A stretch of 63,250 bases of DNA, the filler included, from Reticulomyxa filosa (lineage: Eukaryota > Protista > Foraminifera): assembly GCA_000512085.1 (NCBI GenBank). It is 11 parts of 11 records of this genome, joined end to end, with 100 filler letters (N's around TTAATTAATTAA, not from the genome) between each part and the next. Parts side by side here need not be neighbours in the genome. Positions count along the whole stretch, not along the records: positions 33,218 to 38,113 come from ASPP01021642.1; 10 more parts are not named here. One strand, given 5' to 3'. The position numbers were made by a program, and so were the translations under genes. This document shows, in pieces, positions 33,218 to 38,613 of this stretch (within the stretch, counting starts at the first letter, position 1; each line of letters opens with the position of its first letter). The notes beneath the pieces are model-generated. The model did not search any database and was not told the origin of the DNA. It worked only from the letters and a program-made list of their open reading frames with translations.

Positions 33218-33369
33218 AAAGAGATTATAAAGATGATGGAATATTATGTCTTACATTCTTAGGTTTTGAAGAAAAAGAAAAAAAGAAAAAAAAGAAAAGT
33301 TATGATTATAGTCGTGGTATTAGTCTATGTTTTGGTTCAAACCAAGGTCCTATTAGTATTTGGAGATAA
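33218..33369 (+). CDS. C-terminal fragment of a WD40-family protein
   Basis: 'GILCLTFLG...ISLCFGSNQGPISIWR*' looks like a terminal WD repeat. Confidence 0.45.
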
Positions 33370-33592
33370 ATGATTTTGTTGTTTGACTTGAACCTTTTGT
33401 GAATTAAAATAAGTAAATTTTTTATCTTGATATCTGATTAAATATTTGACGATAATTTATATTTCTCCCTTTTTTTTTTTACTGATTTTACTATTTTATT
33501 CATAACATTGATTTTTGTATTTTATGTTTTTTAGAAAATAACACTTTTTACAAAAGAAAATAAGCTCTGTGCCAATTTTATTCATTCAATCG

Positions 33593-36561
33593 TTACCATG
33601 CCATAAACCGTCCTCTCAATTTTTTTATTTTTGCTTTCGCTTCCAATGTCTCTGCATGAGATTCTCCCAATACATTATTGTAGATCTTGTATGCTTCTTC
33701 GTAATATGTCAATGCTATCTCTCTTTCTTTTTTGGCTTCGAATGCTGCTCCCAAATTCCAATTTGAATCACCAATTGATCTATCTGTATCTCTATACTCT
33801 TTTCTTATCTTCAAAGCTTTTTTATGGCATTCAATTGTCTTGTCATATCTTTGAGGTTAAAATAGTAGAGTCCCAGCTTAAAGTACAAGCCAGAGACATC
33901 AACGTGATTTTGACCGGAAATGTCTGATCTTATCTTCAATGATTGTTCGCAACATTCAATTGCTTTGTCACACTGTTTGTTATTATAATATATATTCCCT
34001 AAATTATTGTACAGCCAGGCGATCTCTTCGCGATTTGTTCCAGATATCAGTTTTATATTCAATGACTCTTTATAGCATTCAATCGCTTTGTTATATTGTC
34101 CATTATGGTAATAGGAATTTCCTAACTCTTTATACGAATCAGCAACCTCTCTGGAATTTTTTCCAAAATTTTCTATTCTTATTTTCAACGCTTGTTCATG
34201 ACATTCAATTGATTTGCCATACTGTTTATTATTATAATAGGAATGTCCCAAATTATAATACGAAGTAGCAACATCAACAGAATTTATTCCAAAAATGTTT
34301 GATTTTATGCTCAACGACTCTTCATGGCATGCAATTGATTTGTCAAATTGTTTGACATTATAATAAGAAATTCCTAATCGAGAATAGGACCGGGCAACAT
34401 CGACATGGTTTGTCCCAAAAATGTTTACTCTTATTTTCAATGAACTTTCATGGGATTTAATCGCTTCTTTATACTGTTTATTGTAGAAGTATGAATTTCC
34501 TAAATTATAATATGACCAAGCAACGTCAACATGATTTGTTTCAAAGATACCTAATCTTATTTCCAATGCCTTTTCAAAATTTTCGATAGCTTTATCATAC
34601 TGTTTAAAATTACAATAGGAAAGTCCTAAACTATAAAGCACATCAGCAACATCTTTGTGGTTTATTCCAATAGTGTCTAATCTTATTTTCAATGATTTTG
34701 TATAGCATTCGATTGATTTGTTATACTCTTGTTTCTGGGAATATGAATTTCCTAGATTGACATACAATTGTGCAACAAAAGGGTAAACCTTGTCAAAATT
34801 GCTTGACACGATCTTCAATGCTTTTTGATAGGATTCAATTCCTTTATCATAGTCGCCTTTATTGTAATAAACAACACCAATTATGTTGTTGGCAACAGCA
34901 ACAAAAAGATGATTCAATCCAAAATTGTCAATTGCAATTTGTGAGTATTTGTGCAAATGGCGAAGGGATTTATCATAGCATTCTTTTTTTGTACATTCTT
35001 CTTCTTTGCATTCAATGTCCTGGAGCTGTAATGGAATATCGTGATGTATTTTTGAATTCCATTGAATAATAGAAGCGGATTGTTCCGATTGTGGATCAGT
35101 CTTTGCATTTTTTGTTACAAATATTTGTCGAGTGGTAATTGTGACACTTCCTTTGCATTGAAGGTCACAATTAATAGCATAAACAATTCCATCGATATTT
35201 ACATTTTGCAATATAACCAACTTTTTTGGTATTATATACATGCAATATTCATCGAATACCTTTATATTATCTGCTAAAGTGGTAAATAGAGAAAGATTAT
35301 CATTTCTATTTTTCCATTTCGATGTATCATAGGCAATAACAATCAATCCTTGTTCATTGTTGCTTATCATTTTTTTCTACTAATCTCACTGCTTCTGCAT
35401 TTGCTTTTCTCCATGTCCTGCGCCAGTGTATTTTTAAATCCAGAGTATCTGAAGCGTTGTCATTTTTACACTCACCATTGTCATTATTATCATCCATTTC
35501 CTCATGTTGTAATTTCTGAATAAAATAAATATCAAAAGAGGCAGTTGAAACAAGTTGAACGATTTCTCTTCCCAATGTCTTGTCATTCATAATGTTTCTA
35601 GTTTTTTTGATGACAAAATCAAAGCTTTCATTAATATTCTTTTCGATGGTTTGACAAAAAATTTCAGTGAAATAACTTCCTTTTTTAATAATATCATACT
35701 CGCTTCCTGAACTATCAGCTATTACTTTGCCTGGAGTGGTTGCGAACACTATAAATGTATCTGCCTCTATATTGTACCATGATACTTTTCCACGATTAAT
35801 CTTTATTTGATCAGGATGTTGCTCCCCTCTGCACCCAATTTTTATAAATATTTTTGGTTTTTTAACAAAGTGTTTTGATTTCATAAAAGTATTCTGAATA
35901 TCTTTGAAATCATTTGTTTCTTCGTCACTTGTAATTAATGTATCTCCATTCATTCCAAATCCTCCATGTCCACACCACACAAAAATAAATGCATCAAAAC
36001 AAGCATTGCTAGTATGCAAAGCCTTATGATGATCAAGAAAACTTTCCAATTGGCTTGCAGTAAGTGATTCAGTTGCCGAATTTTTTGGATCATAAGTGTT
36101 AAATACTTGATAACCAAATTTGGATTGGAATAATCTTTGGAATAACAAAAGATCTCGTTTTACACCTTCCAAATATGGGAGTTGCTTATATTTAATTGCT
36201 CCTGTTAATAATACCAATGGATTCTTTATTTTATGTAATAATTCATTTTTTTTTTTTTTTTTTGGTTAATGCATTTCATTTGTGCTTATTTCAAAATGTT
36301 TCGTAGTTCGTTAATAGAGAATAAACTTGGCTGAAGCTGCAAATTGAAAATTACAGGACGATCTTCAAATGCATCAATTACATTTTCATCATTTTCAACA
36401 CAACAACCATCTCCATCAGTGATCGCAATCAATTTGTCGTTTGCATGAGCAGATTCCATAATTTGAGCGATTTTTCGTTTCAGGTCTTTTAATGTCAGTT
36501 CTGACAACGTTATTTTGTGTGCTTTTTTACCATCGCTGATATGTGCTTCGTACAAAGACAT
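33593..36561 (-). CDS. PB1/ubiquitin-like + caspase-fold (peptidase C14) + linker + ~10 TPR fusion protein
   Basis: Exon 1 MSLYEAHISDG...; catalytic 'FVWCGHGG' and 'KPKIFIKIGCRG'; p10-like 'ADTFIVFATTPG...KGSYFTEIFC...QLVST..IYF'; 42-aa TPRs. The ORFs join via 1-nt shifts at A runs (~35373, ~33851). The intron-1 acceptor is obscured by a poly-A run. Confidence 0.85.
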
Positions 36562-36792
36562 GTTATTAAAAGTCTTTAGTGTTTCAAGTCTTAATATTTT
36601 TTTCTTCAAAAATTATAGAGTGACAAAAACGCTTTGAACCAATTGGTTCCCGTGTACACGAATTTATTCGATAATCCACCACGGTGGTAATTTTGTGTTC
36701 ATTTAACTTGTTCATTCGTTTTTCATATTTTGTTTTGCCCCTTTTTGTGTTGAAAATCACAAGGGAAATCTTTATAGAAATTATTCTAAGTA

Positions 36793-37809
36793 ATGTCGAA
36801 AATTGAAGAAAAAGAAGCTGATGGCCCACCCTTTGGCCTTCAAAACATCCCTTCTCGTAATTTGGTAGACTTTGTGTTGAAGACAAGAGATAGCGCACAA
36901 AAGGCAAGCTATTTGGTAGAATACACGCCGCAGCCAATTGAAATAAAAGACGAACAAAACGAAAAAATAATCTTTGCTTTATGCCTAGCAGAAAATTTAT
37001 TGAAAAAACCAACTGCGATTCCTCCAAAAACCCAAGAGAACCAAAGTAAGAGTGAAAACGTGGCAAAAAATAGTCCGTTTTTGCCACCGTTTGCAAAAGG
37101 TTCTCACGTGTGTAGTATTAGTTTAAGCGAAAATATCAAGTATGAATTAATTTTGAACAAATTTCCAGTTTGGCCAAATCATTTGTTGTGCGTATCTAAC
37201 CCTTATGTAAATCAAACAGATCTATTGAGCAAACAAGAGTTATCAATGCTATTAGGATTATTGGAATCTTTTGATAGTGATGATCATGAAAGTATAATAT
37301 TTATGAACAGTGGCGCAGAAAGTGGAGCCACTCAGCTGCATCGTCATGTTCATTGCTTGTTTATAAAAAAGCCGGTCTCTAAAAAATTGCTTAAATTATC
37401 AAACGATGATCAATATGTCAATGAATTATTTAATGAAAAAAACAAGTTATTTCATTTTTTGAAAGTGGATTTTGACTTGCAATCTAAACAAACAAAGCTG
37501 AATCTTCCTCAACTGTTACATGATGAATACATAAAAATTCTTGATAAATGGAACACTGTTGATTTGCTCGCCCCTAAAGGTGTTTCCTACAACCTGGTAT
37601 TGCTGAGAAACACCATGATCATTATCCCAAGAAAAGAGTCACACTGGGTTTTTCACGACAAAAATGAAAATGATCCTGTTCGTATTGCGATCAACGCACT
37701 ACCATTCGTTGGTGTTGTATTTGCTGATACCAAACTGGGTTTCGAATGTGTCAAAAAAATTGGTTTGCAGTCAATTCTTACCCACGTTACCTTTCCTTTA
37801 AAAAAATAA
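36793..37809 (+). CDS. Ap4A phosphorylase / ATP adenylyltransferase (APA1/2 family, HIT-like)
   Basis: SPFLPP, LILNKFPV..HLL, Q.DLL, FMNSGAESGATQLHRHVH, YNLVL...IIPR, INAL.F.G; intronless, 338 aa. Confidence 0.88.
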   Translation: MSKIEEKEADGPPFGLQNIPSRNLVDFVLKTRDSAQKASYLVEYTPQPIEIKDEQNEKIIFALCLAENLLKKPTAIPPKTQENQSKSENVAKNSPFLPPFAKGSHVCSISLSENIKYELILNKFPVWPNHLLCVSNPYVNQTDLLSKQELSMLLGLLESFDSDDHESIIFMNSGAESGATQLHRHVHCLFIKKPVSKKLLKLSNDDQYVNELFNEKNKLFHFLKVDFDLQSKQTKLNLPQLLHDEYIKILDKWNTVDLLAPKGVSYNLVLLRNTMIIIPRKESHWVFHDKNENDPVRIAINALPFVGVVFADTKLGFECVKKIGLQSILTHVTFPLKK

Positions 37810-38613
37810 AATATGCAAAGAAAGGATGAGAGACAAAACTGTTTATCCTGTTCTCTTTCTGCGTCTGGTTGTTCTCATCAAAAATATTATCTTTTTGCTT
37901 TCATGTACAAAAAAAATTTTCAAAATCAAAAGTGGTCCAAAATAATTTGGAGTCGGTTATGACTCATACAACGGATAATTGAACATCTTTTTCATTCATA
38001 TGAAAATAATATTTTTTTAACATTATCTGCAAACATTCAAGTGTTCCATTTGTTTCATATTGTGATAATATATATATATATATTTATTTAATAACAAAAG
38101 AATAAAATACAATNNNNNNNNNNNNNNNNNNNNNNNNNNNNNNNNNNNNNNNNNNNNTTAATTAATTAANNNNNNNNNNNNNNNNNNNNNNNNNNNNNNN
38201 NNNNNNNNNNNNNCTTTTAACTTATGTTTTTTCTTTTAAAAAGCTTTAGAACACACAAAATACGACGTCGATTTATATGCTGAGTTGGGCTTAACCATAT
38301 ATTTTGTGGAATCACAAGCAACATGTTTTATTTCTTGCATTCGACTAGCAGTATGGACTGGTCAACAGTCTAGTTTAAGTTTTAATATATTCTACGTTAT
38401 CTGTTTTTAAAAATATATGTTGAAGGCTTGCAATTCATAGTCTATTTAAACTGCATATAAGGTACTAAAAAGTAGTCTTATGATTTCATTACTCATTCAA
38501 CGAACAAATGACGACGCATGAAAATAAATTGTTAAAGTTAGTTCAAGCTTTAAATAATTTTAAAAACGTTGAAATCGACTACGAAATTTTAATAGTTTTT
38601 TAAGAACAATAGA

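What the first reader, a model, noticed from the sequence alone, without database searches (positions are those of the whole stretch)
33593..36561. PB1-like/caspase/TPR fusion: candidate one-component sensor-protease system in a protist
Seen: a ~78-aa ubiquitin-fold-like N-terminus with an acidic 'ITDGDG..VENDENV..AF' (OPCA-like) patch. It is followed by a caspase fold with intact His (CGHG) and Cys (KPKIFIKIGCRG, compare animal KPKLFFIQACRG), a p10-like half in the same chain, a ~120-aa linker and ~10 TPRs. Known: initiator caspases activate by death-fold-driven clustering, PB1 domains polymerise, and 42-aa TPR arrays act as sensors in fungal NLRs and bacterial TPR-CHAT/caspase systems. Inference: ligand sensing by the TPRs, clustering via the PB1-like domain and proteolysis, all in one chain without an NTPase or death domain. 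This would suit defence or self/non-self recognition in a fusing syncytial network. Caspase-like genes in Reticulomyxa have been noted before as I recall; the architecture and function are what appear uncharacterised.
Basis: partly seen in the sequence, partly recalled or inferred. Interest (0 to 1): 0.88.

Follow-up and report, generated by a model that had tools for sequence, protein, structure and literature searches.

The report
PB1-like caspase-TPR gene, foraminifer family
This stretch of the foraminifer Reticulomyxa filosa carries one gene that joins a PB1-like clustering domain, an animal-type caspase protease with intact catalytic residues, an unknown middle domain and ten TPR repeats; it belongs to a family of about 100 undescribed paralogues, most with dead protease sites, and this copy has three single-base frame breaks in the draft assembly.

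Summary
On the minus strand, 36561 to 33593, lies one gene with four parts:
- An 78-aa beta-grasp domain whose closest folds are PB1, Par3-NTD and CIDE-N.
- A Peptidase_C14 domain closest to animal caspases, with His and Cys intact.
- Ten 42-aa TPR units.

The joins are not simple introns. There is one short intron after the N-domain. There are also three one-base frame breaks: in an A18 run, in an A7 run and near 33847. No RNA run was listed, so I cannot tell assembly error from recent pseudogenisation.

Paralogues show that the single chain is real. In RFI_05612 one 890-codon ORF holds the caspase-like, middle and TPR parts. The N-domain marks about 100 cluster representatives; all those whose source I saw are Reticulomyxa, apart from a few environmental sequences. 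Half carry TPRs. Only about 8 of 44 keep the His-Cys dyad, and this copy is one of them. The S1 pocket lacks the Asp-binding arginines.

The sensor-clustering-protease mechanism is plausible but inferred. Caspase homologues in Reticulomyxa were already published; the architecture and the family were not found in the searchable literature.

The parts
36327..36561 (-). Exon 1: N-terminal PB1-like beta-grasp domain (aa 1-78), with an acidic OPCA-like loop at residues 47-60. The beta-1 position holds Glu where the family consensus has Lys.
   Evidence: AF2 on a 78-sequence alignment gives pLDDT 92.9 and a b-b-a-b-(b)-a-b topology, with the last strand at residues 71-77. The top 8 of 48,161 VIA-align chains are PB1, Par3-NTD or CIDE-N, Z 8.9-7.8. 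The top Foldseek hit is AtNBR1 PB1, E 1.8e-3. The family profile against PDB is best on Bem1 PB1, E 0.017. The top three named ESM-feature clusters carry PF00564.
36285..36326 (-). Proposed intron 1: 42 nt, phase 1, GT..AG, at the position where paralogues have their intron.
   Evidence: Paralogue introns lie directly after the last strand, with the same A|GTT donor: L002 about 61-64 nt, L003 about 79-82 nt, L004 91 nt. The NCBI model RFI_25175 instead splices 36354..36224. That removes the beta-5 strand, which the AF2 model needs.
36218..36284 (-). Lys-rich spacer holding an A18 run (36246-36263). This is frame break 1, where the frame is off by one base.
   Evidence: The frames are shown. 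Downstream of the run, the caspase frame reads P-K-K-K-K-K-N-E-L-L-H-K-I-K-N-P-L-V-L-L. This matches paralogue P0004, K-K-K-K-E-D-N-E-G-Y-K-I-M-N-P-L-V-L-L.
35543..36214 (-). Caspase-type Peptidase_C14 domain with p20 and p10 halves. The His codon is at 35968-35966 and the Cys codon at 35833-35831.
   Evidence: Pfam PF00656, E 2.5e-19. PDB by sequence: caspase-7, E 1.5e-4. The family profile hits caspase-3 at E 2.5e-10 and Dronc at 4.5e-10, and all top 60 hits are caspases. At the S1 positions, the Arg179 equivalent is Leu, Gln283 is Ile and Arg341 is Asp.
35370..35376 (-). Frame break 2: an A7 run where paralogues read straight through, implying one extra A.
   Evidence: tblastn of P0007 aligns residues 122-420 in one frame up to 35372 and residues 419-636 in the next frame from 35376. 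P0002 reads A-E-A-A-K-I-V-E-Q-M-I-S-D-N-K-Q-G-L without interruption.
34966..35461 (-). Conserved orphan middle module: a helix (H-W-x-x-x-W-R-K-x-N-A-E-A) followed by a ~135-aa beta-rich domain. Gly8, Gly61 and Trp104 are invariant.
   Evidence: The module occurs in about 55 family members; the alignment is A4. AF2 gives pLDDT 77.8, about 90 in the core. Nothing known matches it: Foldseek best E 0.54, VIA best Z 4.0, ESM Atlas TM 0.40 or less, no Pfam hit.
33596..34902 (-). Ten 42-aa TPR units of the TPR_12 / TPR_10 / NPHP3 type, plus a C-terminal capping helix. Frame break 3, one base missing, lies in unit 9 near 33847. The stop codon is at 33593-33595.
   Evidence: Pfam TPR_12 E 5.6e-86, TPR_10 E 7.4e-53, and TPR hits for the last segment. 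Unit segmentation and about 47% internal identity are. In the shifted frame the text reads Y-D-K-T-I-E-C-H-K-K-A-L-K-I-R, the family TPR consensus.

Best explanation
**Shown.** The locus is one two-exon gene, or a very recently broken copy of one, from a large Reticulomyxa filosa family. Its order is:
1. A PB1-like beta-grasp domain.
2. A short Lys-rich spacer.
3. A caspase-clade C14 protease domain.
4. A conserved orphan middle domain.
5. Ten 42-aa TPRs.

This copy keeps the catalytic His and Cys. Most paralogues have lost one or both.

**Inferred mechanism.**
- The TPR array binds a partner or ligand and holds the protein in check.
- The N-terminal beta-grasp makes front-to-back contacts with the N-domains of other family members, as PB1, Par3-NTD and CIDE-N domains do.
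- The resulting proximity dimerises and activates the caspase domain, as death-fold clustering does for initiator caspases.
- No NTPase is involved.
- The S1 pocket has Leu, Ile and Asp in place of Arg, Gln and Arg. The protease is therefore unlikely to cut after Asp and may prefer a basic P1 residue.
- The many dead paralogues would act as cFLIP-like partners, decoys or scaffolds.

**My odds.**

| Claim | Probability |
|---|---|
| Single-chain architecture | about 0.95 |
| N-domain is a PB1-type interaction module | about 0.7 |
| Proximity-activated proteolysis | about 0.4 |
| This copy is intact in the organism | about 0.45 |
For: **Domains.** See (caspase; N-domain; middle domain; TPR).

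**Single chain.**
- Paralogue loci L001-L003 show the same order on one strand.
- RFI_05612 has exon 1 covering aa 1-78, a 91-nt intron, then one 890-codon ORF.
- RFI_00728 and RFI_23453 are annotated with the N-domain, C14 and TPR in one protein.

**Family size and make-up.**
- An HMM of the N-domain finds 101 representatives at E <= 1e-3 among 1.84 billion.
- Of the ten whose source I checked, eight are R. filosa and two are environmental.
- 49 of 98 carry TPRs.

**Catalytic state.**
- The dyad is intact in this copy. In a midpoint-rooted FastTree tree (no support values), the members that keep His and Cys sit near the base, which would fit an active ancestor.
- An acidic residue at the Arg341-equivalent position occurs in 26 of 38 representatives.

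**TPR variability.** The most variable TPR positions across 109 family units are helix-A positions 3, 6, 7, 10, 13 and 14 and three loop positions. From my own knowledge of TPR structures, these helix-A positions face the concave groove. That fits a diversifying binding groove, though only weakly.
Against: - There are three frame breaks in 2.97 kb, and no transcript data.
- No Pfam PB1 hit at E <= 1 in 78 N-domains. The weak hits go to other beta-grasp families: GRHL1_C in 11, DWNN in 4 and CIDE-N in 2.
- The VIA Z-scores of PB1 domains (8.9-7.8) are within 1 of ubiquitin-like domains (7.8-7.0), so the fold subclass is favoured, not proven.
- The OPCA-like loop is three residues shorter than the canonical motif, and this copy has Glu at the beta-1 Lys position.
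- Most paralogues are catalytically dead, which suggests that proteolysis is not the family's main business.
- The TPR units are only about 47% alike. The near-identical repeats of some fungal NLR sensors are absent.
- No oligomerisation, ligand or substrate has been tested.
Confidence: 0.5

Rival explanations
1. This copy is a recent pseudogene of the family. The three one-base indels are real, and the locus makes at most a truncated N-domain-plus-caspase product.
For: - There are three frame breaks.
- Other family loci are also split. L001 has a one-base loss (TT to T) inside the middle domain. L003 is in five or more pieces.
- Non-family neighbours on the same contigs look whole. The Ap4A phosphorylase gene is a single 338-codon ORF with three 7-base runs. 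The AAA ATPase gene in L003 is called as one 813-aa product.
- Large, fast-evolving families usually hold many pseudogenes (my own knowledge).
Against: - Two of the three breaks lie in A18 and A7 runs, the classic sites of sequencing error.
- The assembly is a very fragmented draft, with N50 3.6 kb in 50,809 scaffolds (PMC13746701).
- There is no in-frame nonsense substitution anywhere. All four segments stay open for 91-519 codons where chance allows about 12.
- The catalytic residues and all conserved family positions are kept.
Confidence: 0.45
2. The family is a non-proteolytic scaffold or adaptor. The caspase fold serves only as a dimerisation or binding module, and the kinesin-light-chain-type TPRs bind cargo or cytoskeletal partners in the reticulopodial network. 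The intact dyad here would be a relic.
For: - About 36 of 44 representatives lack His and/or Cys, most often replaced by Tyr.
- Several members, such as P0008, P0039, P0065 and P0077, have the N-domain followed directly by the middle domain, with no caspase part.
- The middle domain and the TPRs are the best conserved parts.
- The TPRs score well on TPR_12 and TPR_NPHP3. TPR_12 is, from my own knowledge, the kinesin-light-chain type.
Against: - The dyad is retained in several separate lineages, including an environmental homologue (P0103), the K-N-A-C-R-G clade and this copy. That retention argues for selection on catalysis in a subset.
- The residues around the active site are conserved in those members (C-G-H-G, K-P-K-I-F-I-K, C-R-G, G-S-Y-F).
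Confidence: 0.25
3. The N-terminal domain is a generic ubiquitin-like fold used for something other than PB1-style front-to-back assembly, such as binding a different partner or acting as a plain spacer.
For: - No Pfam PB1 hit. The weak hits are to GRHL1_C, DWNN and CIDE-N.
- Ubiquitin-like domains score within one Z unit of PB1.
- The Foldseek E-values are all above 1e-3.
Against: - Three independent methods rank PB1 first: profile against PDB sequences, two structure aligners and language-model features.
- The acidic loop sits between beta-3 and alpha-2, where the OPCA motif sits.
- The family consensus has Lys in mid beta-1, in a context like the conserved PB1 lysine (the PB1 comparison is from my own knowledge).
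Confidence: 0.25
4. The locus holds two separate genes, as in the public annotation: a 358-aa N-domain-plus-caspase protein (RFI_25175) and an independent TPR protein starting at the ATG at 35370.
For: - The NCBI model ends at the stop that follows the A7 run.
- The third segment begins with ATG.
Against: - That Met is a near-invariant internal residue of the family (V-E-Q-M-I-x-x-N-x-Q-G-L).
- Paralogues read through the same point in one frame.
- The annotated intron removes a strand that the fold needs.
Confidence: 0.07

Closest known systems
Animal initiator caspases (caspase-9, Dronc, caspase-8)
   Same: Both have a C14 fold with p20 and p10 in one chain and a His-Cys dyad in the C-G-H-G and C-R-G contexts. 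The best sequence matches among solved structures are caspase-3, -7, -6 and Dronc. Both also carry an N-terminal homotypic interaction domain ahead of the protease.
   Different: The prodomain is a PB1-like beta-grasp, not a CARD or DED death fold. The S1 residues Arg179, Gln283 and Arg341 are Leu, Ile and Asp here, so Asp specificity is not expected. The protein carries its own C-terminal TPR array and an orphan domain instead of relying on a separate adaptor such as Apaf-1 or FADD.
Published Reticulomyxa filosa caspase-like proteins (Klim et al. 2018, PMC5982838; used as outgroup ETO10778.1 in PMC10959488)
   Same: Same organism and the same kind of C14 domain, which groups with animal caspases in their trees.
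   Different: Klim et al. (2018) contains no mention of TPRs and discusses domain architecture only for the AIF proteins. No paper in the searchable library holds Reticulomyxa, TPR and caspase together. I did not check whether ETO10778.1 belongs to this N-domain family.
PB1 domains and PB1-like polymerising beta-grasps (p62, NBR1, Par6/aPKC, Bem1, Par3-NTD, CIDE-N of FSP27/DFF)
   Same: Same fold and topology, and these are the top structural neighbours. Both have an acidic loop at the OPCA position and, in the family consensus, a mid-beta-1 Lys.
   Different: No Pfam PB1 match. The acidic loop is shorter than the canonical OPCA motif. This copy has Glu at the Lys position. To my knowledge PB1 is not known as a caspase prodomain.
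Prokaryotic caspase homologues fused to repeat sensors (orthocaspases with C-terminal TPR or WD40; the TPR-CHAT protease Csx29 of type III-E CRISPR). This comparison is from my own knowledge, not tested here.
   Same: A caspase-superfamily protease sits in one chain with a TPR array that binds a partner and controls activity.
   Different: The domain here is closest to animal caspases, not to CHAT or orthocaspases. NCBIfam and PADLOC models give no hit for it. The organism is a eukaryote, with a PB1-like N-domain and a large paralogue family.
cFLIP-L, the pseudo-caspase partner of caspase-8 (PMC7586951)
   Same: Both are paralogues with a caspase fold but without catalytic residues, coexisting with active members that share the same interaction domain.
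   Different: Here dead forms outnumber active ones about 4 to 1 across dozens of paralogues. Heterodimerisation is untested.
Fungal and other NLR / STAND receptors with TPR sensor arrays
   Same: Both are large, divergent, lineage-specific repertoires with an N-terminal effector or interaction domain and C-terminal 42-aa TPRs.
   Different: No NACHT or NB-ARC NTPase appeared in the Pfam output I saw. The repeats are not highly alike (47%).

Membership tests
Peptidase C14 (Pfam PF00656, caspase domain) | Profile match above the curated cut-off, covering both the p20 and p10 parts | tested here: met
   70.3 bits against a cut-off of 21.4, E 2.5e-19, model positions 4-227 of 233.
Peptidase C14 (Pfam PF00656, caspase domain) | Catalytic His and Cys at the aligned positions | tested here: met
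   The His of C-G-H-G aligns with the caspase-7 S-H-G motif. The Cys of G-C-R-G aligns with Q-A-C-R-G. Codons are at 35968-35966 and 35833-35831.
Caspases in the strict sense (C14A, Asp-specific) | Closer to C14A than to metacaspases or paracaspases among characterised proteins | tested here: met
   In the family-profile search of PDB, the top 60 of 159 hits are all caspases (caspase-3, Dronc, caspase-7). Klim et al. 2018 report the same grouping. No full phylogeny was made here.
Caspases in the strict sense (C14A, Asp-specific) | S1 pocket residues Arg179, Gln283 and Arg341 (caspase-1 numbering) that bind the P1 Asp | tested here: not met
   The aligned residues are Leu, Ile and Asp in this copy. 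Family counts are Leu 41 of 51, Ile or Asn 37 of 43 residues aligned there, and Asp or Glu 26 of 38. The assignment rests on sequence alignment only.
Caspases in the strict sense (C14A, Asp-specific) | Death-fold prodomain (CARD or DED) in initiator-type members | tested here: not met
   The N-domain is a beta-grasp. No death-fold family appears in the Pfam output.
PB1 domain (Pfam PF00564) | Match to the family's sequence profile | tested here: not met
   None of 78 N-domains hits PF00564 at E <= 1. The family profile does hit the Bem1 PB1 chains at a marginal E of 0.017.
PB1 domain (Pfam PF00564) | Beta-grasp fold of about 80 residues, closest to solved PB1 domains | tested here: met
   pLDDT 92.9. 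VIA top ranks are PKC-iota/Par6 PB1 at Z 8.9, MEKK3 8.8, MAP2K5 8.6, Bem1 8.3, NBR1 8.0 and p62 7.8. Foldseek's top hit is NBR1 PB1. The margin over ubiquitin-like domains is under 1 Z unit.
PB1 domain (Pfam PF00564) | OPCA acidic motif (type A) and/or conserved beta-1 lysine (type B) | tested here: inconclusive
   An acidic loop sits at the right place: D49 in 62 of 78, N/D51, G52, E56, and D58 in 62 of 78. It is three residues shorter than the canonical OPCA motif. The beta-1 position is Lys in 47 of 78 and Glu in 12 of 78, including this copy.
PB1 domain (Pfam PF00564) | Front-to-back homo- or hetero-oligomerisation | not testable with these tools
   This needs multimer modelling or biochemistry.
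TPR repeat proteins (TPR_12 / TPR_10) | Tandem helix-turn-helix repeats matching the TPR profiles | tested here: met
   TPR_12 E 5.6e-86 and TPR_10 E 7.4e-53. Ten units of 42 aa.
NLR / STAND receptors | Central NACHT or NB-ARC type NTPase | tested here: not met
   There is no NTPase family in this gene or among the 25 most common Pfam families of 98 members. The middle domain matches no known fold.
Metacaspase / paracaspase / orthocaspase / CHAT | Best similarity to those subfamilies | tested here: not met
   None appears among the top 60 PDB hits. There is no NCBIfam or PADLOC hit for the protease domain. The acidic residue at the Arg341 position resembles their basic-P1 logic only by analogy.

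The most novel reading that the evidence does not exclude
The roughly 100 paralogues form an NTPase-free innate-immunity or self/non-self recognition repertoire of a syncytial protist. In this reading, variable TPR grooves sense ligands and PB1-like N-domains co-polymerise members of the K-type and E-type. A minority of live caspase-clade proteases, including this one, are switched on in the polymer. The dead paralogues act as decoys or regulators. This would be a caspase-activating platform built on a PB1-type fold instead of a death fold.
Probability: 0.18. Interest if true: 0.85.

Novelty: new variant of a known kind. Interest (0 to 1): 0.6.

Why it matters
Caspase-clade proteases outside animals are rare, and they are central to arguments about how regulated cell death arose. 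This work gives the Reticulomyxa caspase homologues an anatomy:
- a PB1-like prodomain in place of CARD or DED;
- a built-in TPR array;
- a conserved domain of unknown fold;
- a family in which most members have become pseudo-enzymes.

If the N-domain polymerises and activates the protease, proximity-induced caspase activation would have been built at least twice on different clustering folds.

The S1 pocket change makes a concrete, testable prediction that P1 is not Asp.

The work also corrects the public gene model RFI_25175. That model cuts off a strand of the N-domain and stops at a homopolymer frame shift.

Tried and rejected
1. **A GTGAGT...AAG intron of about 125 nt joining the caspase and TPR segments.** Rejected. 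Paralogues encode that stretch (D-T-L-D-F-K-K-H-W-N-R-N-W-R-K...), and P0007 aligns straight across a one-base shift at the A7 run.
2. **The annotated intron 36354..36224.** It keeps the frame but deletes strand beta-5, so I consider it unlikely.
3. **RNA evidence.** No run was listed.
5. **The genome paper (Glockner 2014).** It is not held, so the sequencing platform is not documented here.
6. **The middle domain.** Foldseek PDB, VIA wide, ESM Atlas by shape and by features, Pfam, NCBIfam and PADLOC all gave nothing usable.
7. **Distant caspase relatives for a tree with animal, meta- and paracaspases.** The word-indexed profile search returned only Reticulomyxa and two metagenome proteins, so no cross-kingdom phylogeny was made.
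8. **Near-identical TPR units, as in some fungal NLRs.** Not seen; internal identity is 47%.
9. **A link between the beta-1 K/E type and catalytic state.** I compared the two by eye across the intact-dyad members and ran no statistical test. No pattern was evident.
10. **The joined, frame-corrected protein.** All searches used the separate segments by reference.
Full report
**Source and gene structure.** The piece (33218-38113) is a 4,896-bp contig of Reticulomyxa filosa. Its caspase segment is 100% identical to the NCBI protein RFI_25175. The minus strand from the ATG at 36561 to the TAA at 33593 holds four open segments:

| Segment | Codons |
|---|---|
| 36286-36561 | 91 |
| 35354-36217 | 287 |
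| 33811-35370 | 519 |
| 33593-33814 | 73 |

In this 32% G+C DNA a random codon is a stop with probability 0.085, so chance gives open runs of about 12 codons. These segments are coding sequence.

*Join 1, N-domain to caspase.*
- Paralogues have a phase-1 intron directly after the last strand of the N-domain, with donor A|GTT. Lengths are about 61-64 nt in L002, about 79-82 nt in L003 and 91 nt in L004.
- The same donor is present here at 36326, and an AG lies at 36286-36285. That gives a 42-nt intron.
- The following Lys-rich spacer contains an A18 run (36246-36263). After it the frame is off by one base.
- Downstream of the run, the caspase frame reads a spacer like that of paralogue P0004.
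- The public model splices 36354..36224 instead. That removes residues 70-78, which are strand beta-5 of the predicted fold.

*Join 2, caspase to middle domain.*
- This is not an intron. P0007 aligns up to 35372 in one frame and from 35376 in the next.
- P0002 reads the same text without interruption.
- The shift lies in an A7 run (35370-35376).

*Join 3, inside TPR unit 9.*
- One base is missing near 33847. In the shifted frame the text becomes the family's TPR consensus.

Every search used the separate segments by reference.

**N-terminal domain.**
- A profile of five paralogue N-domains found 101 proteins at E <= 1e-3 among 1.84 billion cluster representatives.
- AlphaFold2 on a 78-sequence alignment gave pLDDT 92.9, pTM 0.82 and a strand-strand-helix-strand-(strand)-helix-strand beta-grasp.
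- An exhaustive structural scan of 48,161 chains ranked these first:

| Structure | Z |
|---|---|
| PKC-iota/Par6 PB1 | 8.9 |
| MEKK3 PB1 | 8.8 |
| MAP2K5 PB1 | 8.6 |
| Par3-NTD | 8.4 |
| Bem1 PB1 | 8.3 |
| FSP27 CIDE-N | 8.2 |
| NBR1 PB1 | 8.0 |
| p62 PB1 | 7.8 |

- Ubiquitin-like domains follow at 7.8 and below.
- Foldseek's best hit was the NBR1 PB1 filament, E 1.8e-3.
- The family profile's best PDB sequence hit was Bem1 PB1, E 0.017.
- The three nearest named ESM Atlas clusters carry PF00564, with scores of 0.89-0.90.
- Against this, no N-domain hits the Pfam PB1 model. The weak hits go to other beta-grasp families.
It is three residues shorter than the canonical motif.
- The family consensus has Lys in mid strand 1 (47 of 78). 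This copy and 11 others have Glu.

I read the domain as a PB1-type beta-grasp by structure. Family membership is unproven.

**Caspase domain.**
- Pfam Peptidase_C14 gives E 2.5e-19 over both halves.
- The single sequence hits caspase-7 and caspase-6 in PDB.
- A 16-member profile hits caspase-3 (E 2.5e-10), Dronc (E 4.5e-10, nearly full length) and caspase-7. All top 60 hits are caspases.
- This agrees with Klim et al. 2018, who grouped Reticulomyxa homologues with animal caspases.
- His and Cys are in place.
- The residues aligned with the Asp-binding Arg179, Gln283 and Arg341 are Leu, Ile and Asp. Across the family the first is mostly Leu and the last mostly Asp or Glu.
- P1-Asp specificity is therefore unlikely. 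An acidic pocket suggests a basic P1. This is an inference from alignment.

**Middle domain.**
- The model is mostly beta, with pLDDT 77.8 overall and about 90 in the core.
- It has no match in PDB (best Foldseek E 0.54; best VIA Z 4.0), the ESM Atlas (TM 0.40 or less) or Pfam.
- My model left out the conserved helix upstream of the A7 break, so the fold is provisional.

**TPR array.**
- There are ten 42-aa units plus a capping helix, about 47% alike.
- Across 109 units from 40 family proteins, the most variable positions are helix-A positions 3, 6, 7, 10, 13 and 14 and three loop positions.
- From my own knowledge of TPR structures, these helix-A positions face the concave groove. This fits a diversifying binding groove, but it is weak evidence, because surface positions vary in any TPR family.

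**Family context.**
- Three paralogue loci show the same order of parts on one strand, split into adjacent gene calls.
- In RFI_05612 the whole region after the intron is one 890-codon ORF. The single chain is therefore shown in genomic DNA, even without RNA.
- RFI_00728 (649 aa) and RFI_23453 (933 aa) are annotated as N-domain plus C14 plus TPR.
- Of 98 N-domain proteins, 49 carry TPRs and 15 reach Pfam C14. A family-specific search finds the caspase-like domain in 50.
- Only about 8 of 44 with both positions aligned keep His and Cys. Tyr is the commonest replacement at both sites.
- In a midpoint-rooted FastTree tree, the intact members lie near the base. These are an environmental sequence (P0103), the K-N-A-C-R-G clade, and this copy next to P0038. 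Rows with fewer than 170 aligned residues were left out, and no support values were examined. That pattern would fit repeated loss from an active ancestor, but the rooting is untested.
- Some members have no caspase part between the N-domain and the middle domain.
- No NTPase or death-fold family appeared in the Pfam output I saw.

**Is this copy intact?**

*For assembly error:*
- Two breaks lie in A18 and A7 runs.
- There is no nonsense substitution.
- All conserved residues are kept.
- The assembly is very fragmented.

*For real decay:*
- Family loci carry roughly one break per 2 kb (my rough count).
- Neighbouring non-family genes look whole. The Ap4A phosphorylase gene here is one example, despite three 7-base runs.
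- A paralogue (L001) also has a one-base loss at a two-base run.

I put the odds near even, 0.45 that the copy is intact. No sequencing run was listed, so reads could not settle it.

**Mechanism.** The architecture is shown. What follows is inferred.
- The N-domain brings molecules together by charge-complementary front-to-back contacts.
- Proximity dimerises the caspase domain. The spacer between the large and small halves is short, about 15 residues.
- The TPRs bind a ligand or partner and gate activity.
- Dead paralogues act as cFLIP-like partners or scaffolds.
- A purely scaffolding role for the family is a serious rival, given how many members are dead.

**Novelty.**
- Caspase homologues in Reticulomyxa are published.
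- C14 or CHAT proteases fused to TPRs are known in prokaryotes (my own knowledge).
- Klim et al. (2018) contains no mention of TPRs and discusses domain architecture only for the AIF proteins. No paper in the searchable library holds Reticulomyxa, TPR and caspase together.
- The apparently undescribed points are the PB1-like prodomain, the orphan domain, the size of the family, the dominance of pseudo-caspases and the altered S1 pocket.
- I rate this a new variant of a known kind.

Noticed in passing
window 36793-37809 (+): A divergently oriented neighbour gene, a single 338-codon ORF, encodes an Ap4A phosphorylase / ATP adenylyltransferase (Ap4A_phos_N E 3.7e-17, ATP_transf E 5.6e-13). It lies 231 bp from the caspase gene's start codon.
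   Followed up: partly
window 36224-36354 and 35354-35376 (-): The public model RFI_25175 (358 aa) appears mis-built. Its intron removes strand beta-5 of the N-domain, and it ends at a stop created by the A7 frame shift. The middle domain and the TPRs are therefore left out of the protein.
   Followed up: yes
family proteins P0008, P0039, P0065, P0077, P0047, P0035: Several annotated family members go from the N-domain almost directly into the middle domain, with no caspase-like part. This could be a true second architecture or exons skipped by the gene caller.
   Followed up: no
L006:2-1714 (JGI metagenome 3300030741): An environmental protein (P0103, 570 aa, cut by the contig end) has the same N-domain, a spacer of about 280 aa and a C14 domain with intact His and Cys (D-A-C-R-G). 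The family therefore exists outside the sequenced R. filosa strain. P0070 (Logan) and the C14-only proteins P0108 and P0109 (JGI) are further non-NCBI sequences.
   Followed up: partly
L001:8908-9195 (-) and L002:7895-8395 (+): Two paralogue loci are each followed within about 0.5-1 kb by ORFs with WD40-like repeats (D-K-T-I-R-I-W-D type). This could reflect segmental duplication of a larger block or a functional pairing.
   Followed up: no
L004:799-2406 (+): A separate 527-aa TPR_12-rich gene lies about 600 bp upstream of the full-length paralogue RFI_05612 on the same strand. This hints at tandem clustering of TPR family genes.
   Followed up: no
family caspase-like domains: Both catalytic residues are most often replaced by Tyr: His to Tyr in 19 representatives and Cys to Tyr in 23. 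Each is a single-base change (CAT/CAC to TAT/TAC; TGT/TGC to TAT/TAC). Whether this reflects mutation bias in an AT-rich genome or selection for Tyr is open.
   Followed up: no
L001:7620-7640 (+): Paralogue RFI_03776 has a one-base loss at a two-base run inside the middle domain (expected ...D-E-H-L-K-I-C-V-P-I-I-Q-W...). This is the same kind of break as the third one in the window.
   Followed up: partly
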